From assembly GCA_964057225.1 (NCBI GenBank), contig OZ059899.1:5084001-5148000 (forward strand): DNA of 64,000 nucleotides, given 5' to 3'. This document shows positions 50,403 to 59,100 of the stretch, one piece after another (position 1 is the first letter of the stretch; every line of letters starts with the position of its first letter). Origin of the DNA: Auanema rhodensis (taxonomy: Eukaryota > Animalia > Nematoda). The notes beneath the pieces were generated by a model. The model made no database searches and was not told the DNA's origin. It saw only the letters and a program-made list of their open reading frames with translations. The position numbers were made by a program, and so were the translations under genes.

Positions 50403-52558
50403 ATGAGCTTATTTGGCGATGTTATTAGCAATGAAATTCATGAAAGCATTTCTAAAAAGAAAACAACAGCCAGGCAAGTTTTTTGTTATATATTTTTTTA
50501 ATTTCGTCTATTTAGGTTCACATATAGACTTCAATTTCTTCATAATGATCACTCTTATGCCAAACGAATTGATCGTGCTTATAAAGAATTAAATAGCGCA
50601 TTTGCAGAAAATCTGATAAATTATTTGATTCCCTTGGATGATACAGGTATCTATTATTTTTTGAAAATATACGTGACAAAATTAAGAAACCAACTCTGTA
50701 GATGGAAGTTTATCTACAGCCGTAGTTGAATGTAATTTTGCTTCGGTCAATGATGTTTTTGTTATTTTGGAAGATATCATTGGCAAAAGGAATAGAACAT
50801 TGATTCGAGTGCCTTGCTGTGGTGCATCTGTAAATTCTGTCATTGATGATGTTAAGAGTGAGGTTCGATATGTTATACCTTTACTATTATATATTTTTAT
50901 TTTATTTAGAAGTCATGTGTTTTGCTGATAGAACAAGTTGAGTTAAGTTCTGGTGAGTTTATAGACAATTTGTTCCGTCTGCTGAATTCTAATAATAAGG
51001 ATGATTGCCAAGTTGCCGTTATCGTTTGCGTATCAACAGGTAATTTCCTAAGGTCTTTCGTTTTGATTAACTTTGATTTGAAGATGTTACTGCCTTTTCT
51101 TCATTGTGTTCCATATCTACTCTGAACAGAATATGTGCTAAAACTTTCCAATTGCCTAGTTCCATAATTGTCTTCGAAAAAATAATTGAAGAAATTCTAT
51201 TTTATGAAAAACAACAGTTCTGGACATCAGGAGAGCTGACCGCGGCCATCAGGTAACTAACTTACTATATGTTGACTACGTATAAATGACTTACAGAAAT
51301 CGGTTTTTTTCTTGCAACCATTCTGTAACGGAAGTTAAGAGAATACTACAGTTTGCTATGTTACAGCATTGCATTAAAAACCCACTACATGACGAGGTTC
51401 TTTTCTTCTGATTTGCATATTATTTTCATAGTTTCCGTTATTTAGAATGAGTTATCAGTGTTTCGAAAAGTATTAGAGAACTATTGGAGATGTCTTAAAT
51501 TTGTATCTGAATCGATTGGGCTTCCTAGAGATACATTTGGGCTATACTTAACTCATGAGTCCATCCAATGTGGAAAACAATTTTGGACAAAACGTCAATT
51601 AGAATCCTATGAGGATATTACGCCTGAGTCAAAAGTCTATAAGTAAGAATGACTTTATGATTTAGTTATATTTTCGCGTTTATAGTAAATGGTATGATAG
51701 ACAGAGAGTTGCAGACCCCGAAAATATTATTGAGTTTTGTAATTCTCTTAGTTCTTTTCTTACTAAGGAGCTAGTAGATAAATTGAAGAAAGAGGTGGAT
51801 AATTACAATGACAGTATATTGAAAGATAAAGAGGAAGCTACGAACGCTCAAGCGAAAACTGAGGATGTTTCGCCTTTGAAGGTTTTTTGAATTCTATTCT
51901 TGTTTAAATTTGAACTTTGATTAAGGCTAAGAAGATGTCCCTTGCTGAACATAAAAAAATGTTAGATGCTCAAAAAGTGAAGAAACTTAATTCTTGGAAA
52001 TCAAAAGCTATTGTTTCATTGTTCGCTTGCATCGAGGTTGTTCGTTTTTTCAATTATAGAAACTAAACAGAGTATTTTAGAATTGCTTAGATACTGTGCT
52101 TTGCAATTGGAAAGATTATGAAATGTCTGAAAAGTTTCTTGTTAGCTATGTTGATGAAATGGCACTCCTGCATGGTAATCCAGCACATGATGCCGAAGCA
52201 GCTATGATTCAACCTCTGGTAATAAAACATTTTCAAATCTATTTTCTAAAATTGAATTTTTAGCCCGATGGTAACCCTGCTGTATCGCTTGCTTATCAAA
52301 AACTTTTGACAAGACCTAACTTCAAATATGCTGATCTAGCCACTTGGGGGCCGAGTTTTGAAAAGGACGTGAGTTTTGATTTATTGATCTCTATCTGATA
52401 TGTCCTCTCTCTAGTTACCTAAATCTATGAAGAACTATGCTGACTCGGCCTTCTTCGCTTCATTGGGTCAACTAGAGGTAATGGGTATCGTGAGAGCACG
52501 TCCTGATAAGAAAGACAGTCGAGTGAATATCATCTATCATCCAACCTTATATACTTAA
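50403..52558 (+). CDS. orc-3: Origin recognition complex subunit 3
   Basis: The AAA-like segment LLIEQVE...VIVCVST...FFSCNHSVTEVKRILQFAMLQH parallels the ORC3 FLYHDFSV...LLEHF pattern. The C-terminal winged helix reads AFFASLGQLEVMGIVRARPDKKDSRV. Confidence 0.8.
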
Positions 52559-52822
52559 TTCAACATGTATATTCTTTATTTAATACTATATATGCTCTTT
52601 TATTATACGTGTACTATGTGAGAAAACAATGTACATATCGATGTTTCTGGTTATATGAGTCATCCCGAGTCATCACTAATTCCACTTATGCATTCTATTA
52701 ACTTGATCTCCTAAAAAACACATTTTTCCTCTGTTTTATACTGTTTCATTCGATTTTTTTCGACTTTTTATATCTATATATGATTTTTGAAATATTCGTT
52801 TCATCAATATAATGTTTCTAGA

Positions 52823-53612
52823 ATGGCAGGAAAGAAATTACCTTCCAAGAAAGCATCTGATAGTTCTTCAACAAGTTCGAGTTTTGAAAAGGTTTTAAAA
52901 TGTTTTTGAATAATATAGTATTCTAAATTTAGGTCGATACAGTAGATTCTCAAAGTGAGAATAGTAGTCTTAATGATGACATTGCTGATCAGAAATTGGA
53001 ACCGGTAGAGAAGGATATCATGGAGAAAACCGAGGAGGAATTACTTAATGTTCCAATGAAGAAAGAACAGGTTTGTTAACTAATAATCAACTAATATATG
53101 AATAAATATACATAAAAAAATTTTAAGGAGCAATTCTATACTGAAGCTGATACATACAAAGCCATCAGAAACCTTATAATGTTTTCTTCTGCAATGTTCG
53201 TATTGCCACTACTTATAATGTTCTCGACCTATCACTACATATTCATAGGTACGATTTAAATACTTTTTACAAACTAATTACGCCACGTAAATCGAGCACA
53301 AAAATATAATATTCTGCATACTTAATTTTTTTGAACATATAATATGTAAATGTACCTCTCTTAAAATGCGAATTCTAGTTTTGTTTTGAATATTGTAACA
53401 AAAATTAATTAATTAACATCTTTACTCATTATTTAATATTTAACTATTTTTTTTTAGATCACTATAATTTACCACCAGATCAAGCTATGCTCTATGCTGC
53501 TTTCTGTGGCGTGGCTGTTGTTTTTGTAATTGTTGGGCTATTCATCTATGTAGCATATCAAGAAGAAAAAGAAGCAGAACAAAAGCTTAAAGCAAGCAAA
53601 AAAGAGGAATAA
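52823..53612 (+). CDS. VMA21-like ER membrane protein (paralogue A) with an acidic N-terminal extension
   Basis: Four exons; two TM helices (AIRNLIMFSSAMFVLPL; YAAFCGVAVVFVIVGLFIYVAY); C-terminal KKEE dilysine ER-retrieval signal. Confidence 0.8.
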
Positions 53613-53853
53613 TTTTCTTTGTTTATTTTTTTCATTAGAAATTAATGTATTATTAATCTGTGATATTTCATACAATTCTCACTTATTTGTAATATAAATT
53701 ACGTAATTTCAATTTTTTCTTAATTTTATTCGTTTGAGCGTTTATTATATTTCCGCTATCTTTACTTACATGTTATTTAACTGTTATTTAACACAATTCA
53801 ATAATTTTTAAACGTCTGAGTGCCCTGCCATTGCAGGCCACTACTTCCCTAAC

Positions 53854-54286
53854 ATGGAGGAATTAATTCCTAGCTTACGTGACCAGCGTGTGCAGGGCGC
53901 GGTGAAGAGTCTAATTGTCTACAGTCTCGTCATTCTGATTGTTCCTCTTGGATCAATGTTCTTGCTCAAGACATATCTGTTCGAAGGTAGCTTATTCTCA
54001 ATATTGCCTGACCTTACACATCAAAACATTTTTTGATGAACAATATGTTCTAGAACAGGCATTGATCCTACTTCTTGATATTTGTTTGTACACACCACTC
54101 ACTCATACTGCATGATAGCAATATTTTTTTCAACAATTTGTTTCAGCGCTTCTTGGATATTCGGTGAACGATTCACTGACTTATTCTGCTGTTGTTGCTG
54201 TTCTGTTGGTTCACGTAGTGTTAGGTTTTTGGATTGTTTCTGCTAATAAACAGGAACTTAAACAAGAACTTAAAAAACAAGATTAA
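53854..54286 (+). CDS. VMA21: V-ATPase assembly factor VMA21 (paralogue B)
   Basis: Exons 53854-53986 and 54147-54286: AVKSLIVYSLVILIVPLGSMF...TYSAVVAVLLVHVVLGFWI...KKQD stop (KKxx). Confidence 0.88.
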
Positions 54287-54288
54287 TC

Positions 54289-55874
54289 ATGCAAAACGAT
54301 GTTCACGGTACATAAATAGTTTTATACTTTACAGATAATGATTTCATTAAGATGCCCCAGTTCATTTGGGCTTTTCACTTGATATAGAGTCAGATAGTTT
54401 ATATTGTTTACGTAGCCAATATCTTCCTTTGGGTAAAATAGGAGGAAAACCATCATGGCTAAATCCTAAAAATATTCCTGTAACTTCACAGTTAGAGTGC
54501 AAAGTAAGCTGTATTACTTTGGACATTAATATTTCGTTTTTGTTAGATCTGTAAGAAAGCAATGTGTTTTCTCATCCAAATTTATGCAACGAAAGATGAC
54601 GATCCTGTGCACTCTTTCCACAGAACTTTGTTTGTGTTCGTTTGTAGAAATCCTCAATGTTCTAAGGTTTAAATGTGAGTTAGGTTGACACAAAATGTTT
54701 TTAAATTCCAGCCGAATGATTCATCAAATCTTAAAGTCTTCCGTTGTGTCCTGCCAAGAGCTAATCCTTATTATTCCGACCAAAATGCAATGGATCCTGA
54801 TCTAGGTATAAGAATTAATAGTTCATAAGCATATTTTTATTGTAGATGGGGATGTTGTTGATCCTTACTATCCTGCGGATGCTCCAAGTCTTTGCAGAAT
54901 CTGCGGTTGTTATGCTAGCAAAAAATGTGCTAAGTGTGGTGTTGCCTGGTAAGGCTACAAATGATAGTGTGTCTCAGTTCATCTTATTATTCAGGTACTG
55001 CTGTAGAGATCATCAAGCTCTTGATTGGACTACCGGTCACCGTGAAAATTGTGGTCTTGCTGCTAGTGTTGATAGTATTGTTAATCCTGCTAATCCTTTT
55101 GTTTTCAAGGAATTTGGAATTGAGCTTGATCAAGTATGATTTCGAGAAATAAGAAATTTTCCATGTTCTCTCTTTAGGAGTATGTTCCTTCAAATATTTT
55201 TGATGATTTGTCTGATGATGAAGATGATGATGGAGCTGATTCTGACGATGAAACTGATGAGGAACGACGCCGTCGTCTCAAAGAGTTTCAAAAATTCATA
55301 GATACACAAAAAGGAGTAAGTTTATTTTTTTTCGTGTTTAGTTGGTTTTCTATTTTTCAGAAGAATGAGGATATTACTGTTGAAGATTGTGAAGCCGCTG
55401 TTGAAGATCAAGCACGAGACGAATCTTTCGAAAAGTTGATATTTTTTTATAATTGTGGTTTATAGATATTTTGCAGGTTTAATAGACTCATTAATCTGAA
55501 TCCTGAACAAATTATTCGTTATCAGCGCTGCGGTACTATTCAAGACTATTTGAAGTAATTTTTTATATCATATTTCAGGAAATCCTTTGAAAGCAACAGA
55601 TTTGGCCCCATCTTTACCTGATGATATCCCATGTTGTGAAATTTGTAATGGCCCTCGCCGTTTCGAGTTTCAATTAACTCCACATCTTCTATCATTAATT
55701 GAAGTTGATTCTATTGGTATTTTGAACCGGTTTCATTATTTTCTTTATTATAACTAATTTATAGGGCAATCCATTGATTGGGCTTCTGTATATGTCTACA
55801 CTTGTGCTAGATCATGCGAGATCCCTGAACTTGGATATGCTGAAGAATTTGTTTGCAAACAAGATTTTAAGTAG
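54289..55874 (+). CDS. pdcd-2: Programmed cell death protein 2 (MYND zinc finger; uS5/RPS2 chaperone family)
   Basis: [11 protein letters not shown]...[23 protein letters not shown] finger (CRICG...KCAKC...[13 protein letters not shown]...C), [28 protein letters not shown]...Y.EEFV. The start is inferred at ATG 54289 via intron 54308-54351. Confidence 0.93.
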
Positions 55875-56134
55875 ATTTGGATGAGAAAATATGCTTCCTG
55901 TGAATTTGCACTCTCATACTGTTGTTGATCTTTTTGTTGATTTTCATTAGCCTTTTGTTAGCCGTTGTTGTTTTTTTTCCTATTTTACCCACATATTTTG
56001 TTAACTGACTCTGTTTTATTTTTTATCTATAAAAGTTAAATTCATAAATATCTGCATTTGAGGGTTCTGTGTTCCACCATTATCAATATTTTCTTTCGGA
56101 ATGCTTTGTAATGTTTCCAAAAATTGTTTAGTTT

Positions 56135-59100
56135 ATGTCCGAATTAAAGACCAGTAGGAAGAGGAAGCTAGAGCATACTTTTAGCCCTAAACAGAAGACT
56201 CCGAACCGTCCTAGAAGTCCGCCCAAGAAAGGTAAATATTGTTTTATCTGGGAGTTTGTGCTCGAAATCGTGTGTACATTGGGAGGAGATTCGAGGAGTT
56301 CTTCCGTTTTTCGTTGTGGTTTCGAAATTATTATACTTATATATCTATCTCTTTATTTTAAAATCTACAAAACGTTTACAGCCCGCAATTTTTTACATAA
56401 AGTTCTCCTGGTTGGATTCCCGGAGAAAGAGAAGCTAGAATATCAAAAATTAATTGTTGGAAATGTTGAATTCGTAGATGTATAGTGATTGACTAATAGA
56501 TTAATTGTCTCATTCTTCTAATACTTTCAGTATTTGGCCCATGATATAACTCACATTATTCTAAAGCCTGCATCTGTTAAGGACAAAAATTTCAGGTGGA
56601 CACCATTATACTTCGGAACGATTGCTGGTGAGTTTCATTAGTCGTTCAAAATTTTTTTTTGTTTTTGTTTTAGGTGCTTGCTTTCTTAGAATTGACTGGT
56701 TGAAAAAATCTTTTGCTAAGAAGATAATTCTCAAAGAAGAACCATTTGTTTTTAAAGACAGTGACATTGACATTCGTGTTATTCGAAGCAAACTTAATAA
56801 AATATCCTTGCCTGAGATACTTAAATTGTAAGAAACCCATATATTTTCTATATTATTTTTATTTTTAGATCAGCTTTTTATTCAAAAATGTCGGGAAGGA
56901 ATGTATTCGCAGATGAAGTTTTTTCTCGAGTTCTGATTATAGGTAGAAAAACAAAAGAAGGTCGTCAGAGAAAAAATGAATTAAGAGCGTTAGTATAGCT
57001 TCGGGTTTTCTCATATCTACTGTTTATTTCAGTGTATTGGAGGCAGGAGGTGCTTTTATAAAACCGGACGATACCTTGAAGAGTCTAAAAGATAAGAAGA
57101 ACACTAATCTTTGGGTCAATGTAAGTTCATATGATCTTTAATTACAAATTCTTATTTCTATTACTTTTAGGCTACTGCAGTTTTCATTCTAAATGGGGAC
57201 TCGTTAGAAGATGCTGATATTAACGAAGAGTTTATTCGAACAATTCTTCTAAATCGTATTCCTATAATGTATGAACAATTTATCACAATGTGCATTAGGC
57301 AAAAGGTAATGTACATTATATTGTTTTGTTTTGTTTCATATTATTATATAAGAGAATGTTTAGCTATTCCCCAATCGTGAAGTGATGTTAACTAACAGCG
57401 CTTCGTATTGGAGAAATGATCATTCACCCAACATTGTTTTCGATGAACAAAGTTTCAATTACATAACTAGCGGGGCTGGATATCCCACGCCCCAAGCGTT
57501 TTCTTCTAATGTACATTTTTGTTTCTCTTTTTTAGTTTGCTTCATTTGCTTTTAGAAACTTACTCGTCGCTCACGAACCAAATCACCTAGTATGATGGAC
57601 GATTTGAATGAATCTTCGTAAATATTAAAAATATGTATTTATTTTATATTTTTCGACTAATTTTAGAATTTCACATATATCGTTGAGTGATTTTGAACGA
57701 GAAATTTCCGAGAATAATTTGACTGTTCACCCTGAACCCTTATTAGCCGAAGAAGAAGAAGAAGATGAACGAGCAGTAACATTTTATATTTAAAAACTAT
57801 TTTTAAAGTCATTCCACCTTGCAGATTTCTTTAATTTTCTCTGAGGCAAATCTGAGCCAAACTACAATATCTGTCTTGTCTGATTTTACTACAGTCCTGG
57901 GAGAAGCAGATGTTACCATGTTTAATGAGAAGCCACCCCTTACCTGGGTAGATTGGAGAGCTGAGTTGAGCATCTGTATTCCTCAAGCTCTAGCGAGAGC
58001 TGGAACGGTATCGATATTTTACATTCAAGTGTTCTTGAATTATTTTTTAGGAATCCGGTTATATGAGTGAAAATGCTGTATCTGCATATAATATGATCTG
58101 TAGTGATTTTTCGAATTATGAACCAACTAGTGCTGTAAGTATATCACGTCCAAAGAACAGTAAACATTTTGCCCAGGTACATGATCTCATTTGTCATGAT
58201 AGTGTAAGCTATATTCGTCACTCGATGGATTCTAATTTTCTTCCCGAACCTGATATCTTATCTAAAATGCTGCACGAAATAGCTATGGTATTGTATTGTT
58301 TTTCTGAAAATTAGAAATTAATATATTCAGCCTTCATATGGTACTAGATTTGATAGTTCGGATTCAGTTTACAAATTAATCGCAGCTTTATTGAAGCAGT
58401 TCCCTCCTACCCATAGTGGTGGAAGACTTTATTGGCTAAAAGTTGAAAAATTCTTTTTTTTTTGTTAGTATTGTATTTCAGGTATTTTCTCAAGCCATAA
58501 TTGTTAGCAATGCACGAAAGTCAGAAGAATTAACTCCTATTCGTAGATTTAAAGCTGAACTAAAATCATTCAGAGAGAAAGTTTTTAACACATTTTCGTA
58601 CGTTTTGGTTTTGATGTCTCTTTTAATTATTATTCCTACAGAAAAGAGGGGACCAATCCGAATTTGATGTCCTTATTGTTAATGTTGCTTGAATATGATC
58701 TCTACGCCTTGCAGGTAAACTCACTAATTTTAAGCTAAACATTATTTTCAATCTTCTTCAGGGTTGCGGCCTAACTGGGAGCCAGGAAGCATTTGAGCGT
58801 GAACCAGATACATGTTCGTCAAAAACTAGATCACGGTAGGAAGCTATAAAAAATTGTTTTGGAAAAAAATATATTACAGATGCTCTGAAAACGAAGAAAT
58901 AAATTTGGAAGGAATCCCTCTTGCTTTCCTGGTTCTTTTCGAACCGAGTGGCTATCGACGAAGAGGACTTGACGAAACTTCAAAAAAATCTCTTGCTGAC
59001 GTAACCGATTATCTTTCAGCAAATGAGTTTAATGTATGAAGAGTTAACATAACTAAAACTATAATATAAGCTTACAGAGTAATTTGGTTCGCAGTTGTTC

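What the first reader, a model, noticed from the sequence alone, without database searches (positions are those of the whole stretch)
53854..54420. Interlocked VMA21/PDCD2 locus: one transcription unit for two unrelated proteins, with a possible fusion
Seen: the VMA21 stop (TAA 54284-86) is followed after only 2 nt by the ATG (54289) that opens PDCD2 through intron 54308-54351. That leaves no room for the usual operon spacer with polyA signal and SL2 site. VMA21 exon 2 (54147-54288) has no ATG in any frame and begins at a perfect TTTCAG. VMA21 exon 1 ends in phase 1 and the PDCD2 exon at 54352 starts in phase 1, so skipping the 161-nt exon 54147-54307 gives an in-frame ...[12 protein letters not shown] fusion with one TM helix. 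Inference: three routes are possible, namely a dicistronic mRNA with reinitiation, SL trans-splicing at the VMA21 intron acceptor that turns a coding exon into the PDCD2 5' UTR, or exon skipping to a membrane-anchored PDCD2. Any of these would couple V-ATPase assembly to 40S biogenesis through one splice choice. I recall that C. elegans VMA21 is annotated at the pdcd-2 locus, so the linkage may be conserved; this is unverified.
Basis: partly seen in the sequence, partly recalled or inferred. Interest (0 to 1): 0.85.

Follow-up and report, generated by a model that had tools for sequence, protein, structure and literature searches.

The report
Two genes on one worm RNA
In this nematode the V-ATPase assembly factor VMA21 ends two bases before the start codon of the ribosome chaperone PDCD2, both lie on one spliced RNA, and worms as distant as C. 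elegans and Toxocara keep the layout, so how the second protein gets translated can be tested directly.

Summary
VMA21 (53854-53986 plus 54147-54286, 90 aa) stops 2 nt before ATG 54289. That ATG opens a 19-nt mini-exon of an 11-exon, 380-aa PDCD2.

RNA-derived contigs from four runs of one study each give one spliced contig. It runs from 53835 through both ORFs to about 56010-56050 and uses every predicted intron, including 54308-54351. The exon-skip junction 53986>54352 was not seen.

The layout is ancient. The spacer is 2 nt in Auanema sp. JU1783, 4 in two strongylids, 5 in Toxocara and 8 in C. elegans, a second Caenorhabditis and a third strongylid. Clade IV worms (Halicephalobus, Steinernema) keep the same gene order with an ordinary 130-190-nt operon spacer.

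Lack of ATG in exon 2 is not significant in this window (0.5 expected). Out-of-frame ATGs are depleted across six tight-spacer species (3 against 7.5).

My best reading is a true dicistronic mRNA inside an operon, with PDCD2 made by termination-reinitiation. The main rival is spliced-leader addition at the VMA21 intron acceptor, and my data cannot exclude it. A functional fusion is unlikely. The scan noted a similar 2-nt pair elsewhere in this genome.

The parts
52823..53612 (+). Upstream VMA21-like paralogue, about 157 aa. Exons 52823-52891, 52933-53070, 53128-53248 and 53458-53612. It is the first gene of the conserved trio.
   Evidence: Model. Pfam VMA21 hits both halves, with the intron at the same profile position. 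Orthologous paralogues lie upstream in JU1783, H. polygyrus, C. elegans, Halicephalobus, Steinernema, H. placei and Toxocara.
53698..53836 (+). Ordinary intercistronic spacer of about 135 nt between the paralogue's RNA 3' end and the acceptor attgcag| of VMA21.
   Evidence: The paralogue's contigs end at 53603, 53681, 53697 and 53701 in the four runs (53681-53701 in three). VMA21-PDCD2 contigs start at 53835 in three of four runs. The acceptor is conserved in JU1783. No contig bridges this spacer.
53837..53986 (+). VMA21 exon 1: a 17-nt 5' UTR, then CDS from ATG 53854 encoding TM1, ending in phase 1.
53987..54146 (+). VMA21 intron, 160 nt. It contains a block at about 54035-54078 that is conserved with JU1783.
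   Evidence: The joint is removed in all four runs.
54147..54286 (+). VMA21 exon 2 coding part: TM2, the C-terminal KKQD and the stop TAA at 54284-86.
   Evidence: The KKXX ER-retrieval motif of yeast Vma21p is described in PMC7483274.
54287..54288 (+). The 2-nt spacer TC between the VMA21 stop and the PDCD2 start.
   Evidence: Homologous spacers are 2-8 nt in seven other taxa.
54289..54307 (+). PDCD2 start codon and 19-nt mini-exon (MQNDVH plus the first base of D). It is physically part of the same exon as VMA21 exon 2.
   Evidence: A single contig piece covers 54145-54306 in all runs. The mini-exon is conserved in length and phase in clade V species (alignment).
54308..54351 (+). PDCD2 intron 1, 44 nt. 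It contains CATAAA at 54311.
   Evidence: The joint is used in all four runs. The CATAAA signal is not conserved in JU1783, H. polygyrus or H. placei.
54352..55874 (+). PDCD2 exons 2-11: 54352-54503, 54547-54666, 54712-54805, 54846-54948, 54995-55133, 55178-55315, 55361-55434, 55477-55532, 55579-55716 and 55765-55874, with stop TAG. The total product is 380 aa.
   Evidence: Model. Every junction is confirmed by joints. Pfam finds zf-MYND and PDCD2_C. It is 78% identical to JU1783 PDCD2.
55875..56054 (+). PDCD2 3' UTR. Contigs end at 56009-56054. The next gene's ATG is at 56135, after an operon-like gap.

Best explanation
The locus is a conserved dicistronic unit inside a nematode operon. The gene order is an ORC3-like gene, a long VMA21 paralogue, VMA21, PDCD2 and a further gene.

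The spacers on either side of the pair are ordinary, about 100-135 nt, and are not bridged by RNA contigs. Between VMA21 and PDCD2 the spacer has collapsed to 2 nt. VMA21 therefore has no 3' UTR of its own, and PDCD2 has no 5' UTR of its own. The mature spliced RNA starts at the acceptor 53836/37 and carries both ORFs.

VMA21 is read from the first AUG, which sits in a strong context. I infer that PDCD2 is made mainly by ribosomes that finish VMA21 at TAA 54284-86 and restart at AUG 54289, that is, termination-reinitiation.

Shown: the anatomy, the splicing, contig-level continuity, and conservation across nematode clades III and V. Inferred: that single mature molecules carry both ORFs, and the restart mechanism.
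For: - One spliced contig per run spans both ORFs in four runs, while the neighbouring operon spacers are not bridged.
- The same continuity is seen in RNA contigs of C. elegans, another Caenorhabditis, H. polygyrus (every listed RNA contig, 9 of the 14 on record, carries both ORFs) and another strongylid.
- Spacers stay at 2-8 nt in eight taxa of clades V and III although their lengths changed several times: 2, 2, 4, 4, 5, 8, 8, 8. Nearby introns range from 44 to 831 nt. This points to selection on stop-start proximity, which only translational coupling explains.
- Clade IV relatives with the same gene order have a normal 134-190-nt spacer, with an acceptor next to or about 37 nt upstream of the PDCD2 ATG.
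- In five of six tight-spacer species every AUG of the VMA21 message is in the VMA21 frame. Pooled out-of-frame ATGs number 3 against 7.5 expected (P about 0.006). The two loose-spacer species show 5 against 5.6. All ribosomes would therefore end at the stop beside the PDCD2 AUG.
- The PDCD2 AUG has A at -3 in all eight taxa (read).
- No conserved private polyA signal for VMA21 was found.
Against: - Contigs are assemblies, not molecules. A short spliced-leader tip or a rare isoform would be dropped, and no spliced leader was recovered even at the expected site 53837.
- From general knowledge, eukaryotic ribosomes usually restart poorly after ORFs of about 90 codons unless a special element helps. 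No conserved structure was found around the junction (0 predicted pairs).
- One Caenorhabditis RNA contig begins exactly 2 nt before VMA21 exon 2, as expected at a branch with a second 5' partner.
- H. placei has three out-of-frame ATGs in exon 2.
- All four runs come from one study.
Confidence: 0.45

Rival explanations
1. Two mRNAs arise from one acceptor. The VMA21 intron acceptor (54146/54147) is sometimes trans-spliced to a spliced leader instead of cis-spliced to exon 1. That gives an SL-exon 2-PDCD2 mRNA. In it the 142-nt VMA21 exon 2 serves as an AUG-free 5' UTR, and AUG 54289 is the first start codon. The dicistronic RNA then serves mainly VMA21.
For: - The acceptor has the perfect consensus gtttcag.
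- Exon 2 has no ATG in five of the six genomic tight-spacer species tested, nor in one Caenorhabditis RNA contig read by eye.
- A Caenorhabditis RNA contig (L023) starts exactly at the AG before exon 2.
- Nematodes normally free downstream cistrons by trans-splicing, and minor trans-splice sites are common (PMC5741048).
Against: - This model gives no reason for the stop-ATG distance to stay at 8 nt or less in eight taxa.
- ATG depletion in exon 2 alone is not significant (3 against 5.5, P 0.09). H. placei and one strongylid contig have ATGs there.
- No SL-exon 2 contig or loose end was seen at 54147, although that test had no positive control.
- The consensus acceptor is needed for cis-splicing anyway.
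Confidence: 0.3
2. Leaky scanning on the dicistronic mRNA. Some 40S subunits pass the VMA21 AUGs and initiate at 54289, as proposed for green-algal polycistronic mRNAs.
For: - There are few AUGs between the 5' end and 54289: only M1 and M35 in the window.
- Out-of-frame ATGs are depleted across species.
- There is precedent in algae (abstracts of PMC7896298 and PMC11291117).
- A follow-up on another 2-nt pair in this genome read it this way.
Against: - The VMA21 AUG has A at -3 and G at +4, a strong context.
- A conserved internal Met35, and extra Met codons in other species, must also be bypassed.
- Leaky scanning does not need the stop to sit next to the second AUG.
Confidence: 0.1
3. Exon skipping joins VMA21 exon 1 to the exon at 54352. 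This would make a functional membrane-anchored PDCD2.
For: - The join is in frame.
- The phases are conserved.
- One database protein, from Trichostrongylus colubriformis (P0108), has exactly this join.
Against: - The junction is not among the joints reported in four runs, though five joints were not shown.
- Predicted fusions in nine species all use different junctions, as expected of gene-predictor artefacts.
- None of 33 relatives of the PDCD2 N-terminus has a VMA21 extension.
- The loop after TM1 is luminal (PMC7483274). That would misplace a cytosolic zinc-finger chaperone.
- The chance of matching phases is 1 in 3.
Confidence: 0.03
4. The two mRNAs are separate after all. VMA21 is polyadenylated inside PDCD2 intron 1 (CATAAA 54311), and PDCD2 starts from a downstream spliced-leader site and a downstream ATG.
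For: - CATAAA lies at 54311.
- Possible acceptors lie at 54334 and 54351.
- AATAAA lies in the long C. elegans intron 1.
Against: - The donor at 54307/08 is used in all four runs.
- The ATG at 54352 is out of frame, and the PDCD2 frame has a stop at 54348-50. The conserved N-terminus therefore needs ATG 54289.
- The polyA-like signal is absent from the intron in JU1783, H. polygyrus and H. placei.
Confidence: 0.03

Closest known systems
C. elegans chromosome III locus: VMA21 homolog (UniProt A5JYQ9, 102 aa) immediately upstream of pdcd-2 (R07E5.10)
   Same: This is the orthologous arrangement. It has the long VMA21 paralogue, then VMA21, then PDCD2 on one strand. The VMA21 intron is in the same phase. 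It has a 19-nt PDCD2 mini-exon (MQTDIH) followed by an intron, and dicistronic RNA contigs.
   Different: The spacer is 8 nt rather than 2, and PDCD2 intron 1 is about 200 nt and contains AATAAA. The arrangement exists as annotation only. I found no paper describing it or its translation. The annotation history is confused: the R07E5.12 hybrid was merged into R07E5.10.
SL1-type operons of C. elegans (Williams et al. 1999, as described in PMC9258526)
   Same: Two operon genes have no intercistronic region, so normal 3' end formation plus SL2 trans-splicing cannot both occur.
   Different: In SL1-type operons the upstream 3' UTR and polyA site abut the downstream trans-splice site. Each gene keeps its own UTRs and the mRNAs are monocistronic. 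Here the coding sequences themselves are 2 nt apart and there is no acceptor between them.
Eukaryotic dicistronic or polycistronic mRNAs: Drosophila cases curated by FlyBase (PMC4528330), Sloth1/2 (PMC9681215) and green algae (PMC7896298, PMC11291117)
   Same: Two conserved, non-overlapping ORFs for separate proteins lie on one processed transcript, and the upstream ORF is small.
   Different: Those cases occur in organisms that lack an operon-resolving machinery, and leaky scanning is favoured for them. Here the host normally resolves polycistrons by trans-splicing. The first AUG is in a strong context, and the spacing is held at 2-8 nt. I know these papers only from the abstracts shown.
Viral termination-reinitiation (calicivirus TURBS, influenza B M1/BM2), reviewed in PMC5972666
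   Same: The stop and restart codons lie within a few nucleotides of each other after a long upstream ORF.
   Different: The viral systems depend on an upstream structured element that pairs with 18S rRNA. No conserved structure was detected here, and complementarity to 18S rRNA was not tested.

Membership tests
VMA21 (PF09446) V-ATPase assembly factor | VMA21-like domain with two transmembrane helices | tested here: met
   Exon 1 matches profile positions 2-30 (E 1.4e-5). Exon 2 matches positions 33-63 (E 8.8e-8, above the cut-off). The protein is 91% identical to Auanema sp. JU1783 VMA21 and 61% to C. elegans A5JYQ9.
VMA21 (PF09446) V-ATPase assembly factor | C-terminal dilysine KKXX ER-retrieval motif (yeast type) | tested here: met
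   The protein ends in KKQD. The motif is described for yeast Vma21p and is absent in human VMA21 (PMC7483274). Its function here was not tested.
PDCD2 / Tsr4 | PDCD2_C domain, an internal MYND zinc finger, and the conserved N-terminal LGF...GGKPxWL segment | tested here: met
   PDCD2_C matches on exons 10 and 11 (E 6e-8 and 1.8e-6), and zf-MYND on exon 6 (E 1e-3). The N-terminal exon finds PDCD2 N-termini at residues 5-10 of their proteins. The full model is 78% identical to JU1783 PDCD2.
Nematode SL2-type operon | Same-strand genes separated by about 100-400 nt, with 3' end formation upstream and a trans-splice acceptor downstream | tested here: met
   This is met for the paralogue-to-VMA21 spacer (about 135 nt) and for the PDCD2-to-next-gene spacer (about 80-120 nt). 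The contigs are separate on each side. Spliced-leader identity could not be tested.
Nematode SL2-type operon | The same spacer architecture between VMA21 and PDCD2 | tested here: not met
   The spacer is 2 nt, with no polyA signal or acceptor between the stop and the ATG.
SL1-type operon | Upstream polyA site directly abutting the downstream trans-splice acceptor, with the downstream ATG after the acceptor | tested here: not met
   There is no 3' UTR and no acceptor between TAA and ATG. The only strong acceptor upstream of the ATG is the VMA21 intron acceptor at 54146.
True dicistronic mRNA | Both ORFs on one mature, spliced, polyadenylated molecule | tested here: inconclusive
   Spliced contigs span both ORFs in four runs, and also in four other species. 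Contigs are not single molecules, and polyA tails and caps were not seen.
True dicistronic mRNA | The downstream ORF is translated from that molecule | not testable with these tools
   This needs ribosome profiling, reporters or genome editing.
Termination-reinitiation | Restart codon within a few nt of the upstream stop | tested here: met
   The distance is 2 nt here and 2-8 nt in seven other taxa.
Termination-reinitiation | Upstream enhancer element (TURBS-like structure or 18S pairing) | tested here: inconclusive
   RNAalifold on the region from -90 to +19 in eight taxa predicts no conserved pairs. Complementarity to 18S rRNA was not tested.

The most novel reading that the evidence does not exclude
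Nematodes of clades III and V have kept a cellular mRNA on which ribosomes finish a 90-104-codon membrane-protein ORF (VMA21) and restart 2-8 nt downstream on an unrelated cytosolic protein (PDCD2). They would do this without a virus-like helper structure, and in a phylum that otherwise resolves polycistrons by trans-splicing. Together with the second 2-nt pair noted in this genome, that would define a class of translationally coupled animal dicistrons.
Probability: 0.35. Interest if true: 0.8.

Novelty: new member of a known kind. Interest (0 to 1): 0.6.

Why it matters
Nematode operons are the textbook case of polycistronic transcripts that trans-splicing always cuts into monocistronic mRNAs. 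Here a pair inside an operon cannot be cut that way, and the arrangement has lasted since clades III and V diverged. Clade IV keeps the ordinary spaced form of the same operon, which serves as a natural control.

The orthologous locus exists in C. elegans, so the question is directly open to genome editing. Can animal ribosomes restart efficiently after a long ORF, or does one acceptor serve both cis- and trans-splicing?

There are also practical consequences. At least nine public nematode proteomes carry artefactual VMA21-PDCD2 fusion proteins. In addition, C. elegans work on 'vma-21' (R07E5.7) may concern the long paralogue rather than the canonical gene beside pdcd-2.

Tried and rejected
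- **Functional exon-skip fusion.** Rejected as the main product, for the reasons given under the fusion rival.
- **Private VMA21 polyA site in PDCD2 intron 1.** CATAAA at 54311 is present only in this window and is not conserved.
- **AATAAA at 54245 inside exon 2.** It lies before the stop and is not conserved.
- **Enlarged VMA21 intron as an internal promoter.** The intron is 160 nt against 40-48 nt for all ten PDCD2 introns. However, the homologous intron of the upstream paralogue is also long (209 nt), so its length is not tied to PDCD2.
- **snoRNA or other known RNA in the intron or at the junction.** Only sub-threshold Rfam matches were found.
- **Hairpin in the conserved intron block.** The fold is not significant (z = -1.25).
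- **Conserved structure at the stop-start junction.** None was found.
- **Spliced-leader sequences in the fetched RNA contigs.** None was found.
- **Published SL1/SL2 or long-read data for R07E5.10, R07E5.7 or pdcd-2.** The supplements that are held contain nothing. WormBook and Genome Research papers on operons are not held.
Full report
**Observation**

The sequence is as described. VMA21 is encoded by 53854-53986 and 54147-54286 and is 90 aa long. Pfam VMA21 matches both exons. The protein ends in KKQD, a KKXX-type tail like the ER-retrieval motif of yeast Vma21p (PMC7483274).

The stop TAA at 54284-86 is followed by TC and then ATG 54289. That ATG opens a 19-nt mini-exon (MQNDVH plus one base), which is spliced over 54308-54351 to 54352. 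I built a complete 11-exon, 380-aa PDCD2 model with zf-MYND and PDCD2_C.

In the PDCD2 frame a stop sits at 54348-50, and the ATG at 54352 is out of frame. The conserved N-terminus (APVHLGF...GGKPSWL) can therefore only be reached from ATG 54289.

The organism is a rhabditid close to Auanema. Its VMA21 is 91% and its PDCD2 78% identical to Auanema sp. JU1783.

**RNA evidence**

Four runs from one study hold about half the sampled words of the stretch, as expected for spliced RNA. Laid on 52500-57500, each run gives one contig of 1570-1609 nt.

- It begins at 53835 in three runs and at 53882 in the fourth.
- It removes 53987-54146.
- It runs without a break across the stop and the ATG (piece 54145-54306).
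- It removes 54308-54351 and all nine further PDCD2 introns.
- It ends at 56009-56054.

The start at 53835 is the AG of the acceptor attgcag|GCC. An assembly graph would break there if spliced-leader and outron reads converge at that point. This is an inference: no spliced-leader letters were recovered.

The upstream gene's contigs end at 53603-53701 (53681-53701 in three of the four runs), and the downstream gene has its own contig. These libraries therefore do not bridge ordinary operon spacers. The junction 53986>54352 was not among the listed joints, although five joints were not shown. Contigs are not molecules and they drop rare forms, so a minor spliced-leader isoform cannot be excluded.

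**Context**

The gene upstream (52823-53612) is a second, longer VMA21-like paralogue with the intron at the same domain position. Before it lies a probable ORC3-like gene, supported by a weak Pfam hit and by synteny. Spacing of about 135 nt before VMA21, and of about 80-120 nt after PDCD2, is typical of an operon.

**Conservation**

The trio of long paralogue, VMA21 and PDCD2 lies on one strand in all the genomes listed below.

| Taxon | Stop-to-ATG spacer |
|---|---|
| This window | 2 nt |
| Auanema sp. JU1783 | 2 nt |
| H. polygyrus | 4 nt |
| H. placei | 4 nt |
| Another strongylid (RNA contig) | 8 nt |
| C. elegans | 8 nt |
| Another Caenorhabditis (RNA contig) | 8 nt |
| Toxocara canis (clade III) | 5 nt, with a 31-nt mini-exon |
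| Halicephalobus (clade IV) | 134 nt, acceptor directly before the ATG |
| Steinernema (clade IV) | about 190 nt, with an acceptor, a 37-nt UTR and a 22-nt mini-exon |

In Bursaphelenchus the two genes lie on different contigs.

RNA contigs of C. elegans, H. polygyrus (every listed RNA contig that carries VMA21, 9 of the 14 on record) and the two unnamed species also carry both ORFs.

C. elegans VMA21 homolog A5JYQ9 sits 8 nt before pdcd-2. An early hybrid model, R07E5.12 (VMA21 N-part plus PDCD2 N-terminus), was merged into R07E5.10 (PMC3094335).

**Fusions**

At least nine nematode annotations contain proteins with both VMA21 and PDCD2_C domains. Their junctions all differ: cryptic donors in exon 2, intron read-through, and in one case the exon-1 skip. 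One prediction even fuses all three genes.

This is what gene predictors do when two ORFs share one transcript, and it is not evidence for a conserved fusion isoform. Among the 33 relatives of the PDCD2 N-terminal exon, none has a VMA21 extension. The loop after TM1 is luminal (PMC7483274), so a fusion would place the cytosolic PDCD2 in the ER lumen.

**ATG avoidance**

In the window alone, the lack of ATG in exon 2 is unremarkable. The expectation is 0.49 out-of-frame ATG given the protein and the gene's own codons.

Pooled over six tight-spacer species and the whole VMA21 CDS, out-of-frame ATGs number 3, all in H. placei, against 7.5 expected (P about 0.006). The two loose-spacer species show 5 against 5.6. 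The species are related and the sample is small, so this is suggestive only.

**Mechanism**

Three things have to be explained:

- there is no room for RNA processing between the two ORFs;
- there is one spliced RNA;
- the spacer changed length repeatedly but never exceeded 8 nt in eight taxa, while neighbouring introns range from 44 to 831 nt.

Only translational coupling gives a reason for that last constraint. I therefore favour termination-reinitiation on a dicistronic mRNA (0.45). The strong context of the VMA21 AUG and the conserved internal Met argue against leaky scanning (0.1).

The main rival (0.3) is spliced-leader addition at the VMA21 intron acceptor, which would turn exon 2 into an AUG-free leader. 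It fits nematode biology, and it fits one Caenorhabditis contig that starts exactly at that acceptor. It does not explain the tight spacing.

No conserved RNA structure flanks the junction, and no known RNA family is present.

**Comparison and novelty**

This is not an SL2-type or an SL1-type operon junction, because those defining features were tested and not met. It resembles the dicistronic mRNAs of flies and green algae, and in its spacing it resembles viral termination-reinitiation.

The orthologous C. elegans CDS pair is already annotated, so this locus is a new member of a known, though undescribed, arrangement. In the searched library I found no paper on the arrangement, its conservation or its translation.

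The scan has noted a similar 2-nt pair (TMEM242/PIG-L) and a 22-nt pair elsewhere in this genome. I did not check either of them.

Noticed in passing
window 52445-52476 joined to 52822: In runs X1 and X2 the contig of the VMA21-like paralogue carries 255 extra letters that match 52445-52474. This implies a cis-splice from donor CTAGAG|gtaatg (52476/77) in the upstream ORC3-like gene to the acceptor tttctag| one base before the paralogue's ATG 52823. Run X3 instead shows the upstream gene's normal 3' end, near 52759. An operon acceptor therefore seems to serve both cis- and trans-type splicing here.
   Followed up: partly
window 54035-54078 (inside the VMA21 intron): This block is about 90% conserved with Auanema sp. 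JU1783, while the rest of the intron and PDCD2 intron 1 are not alignable. It contains the palindrome GAACAnnnTGTTC. That palindrome occurs only once in the 64-kb window (0.07 expected) and is absent from the other nematode loci fetched. There is no Rfam match and no significant fold.
   Followed up: partly
window 53810-53845: About 30 nt around the VMA21 trans-splice acceptor (gagtgccctgccattgcag|gccact) are nearly identical in JU1783. CCTGC and GCAGG could pair across the acceptor AG.
   Followed up: no
L008 3887-4554 and 5001-5383 (C. elegans chromosome III): C. elegans has two VMA21-domain genes in tandem, of 191 aa and 102 aa. Papers name R07E5.7 as the VMA21 homolog (PMC8519577). The protein closest to canonical VMA21 is the 102-aa A5JYQ9 beside pdcd-2. 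R07E5.7 is probably the long paralogue, and the rescuing fosmid probably carries both genes. I could not confirm the gene names with these tools.
   Followed up: partly
proteins P0083, P0085, P0089, P0093, P0105, P0108, P0114, P0118, P0120: Public proteomes of at least nine nematodes hold artefactual VMA21-PDCD2 fusion proteins, each with a different junction. Caenorhabditis sp. 36 has a 653-aa fusion of all three genes of the trio.
   Followed up: yes
L003-L005, L017-L022 (H. polygyrus RNA contigs); L009, L010 (C. elegans RNA contigs): These contigs have their introns removed. They still contain the unprocessed region upstream of the VMA21 acceptor, and in H. polygyrus they reach into the paralogue's 3' UTR and CDS. 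They look like polycistronic precursors and support operon transcription. They also show that contig continuity alone does not prove a mature mRNA.
   Followed up: partly
L014 1-130 (RNA contig of an unidentified GC-rich rhabditid): Here the PDCD2 ATG (MQAQPHD...) is preceded by about 53 nt without an ATG, after a possible stop of an upstream ORF of which only 9 codons are present. If that ORF is VMA21, the spacer is not always 8 nt or less.
   Followed up: no
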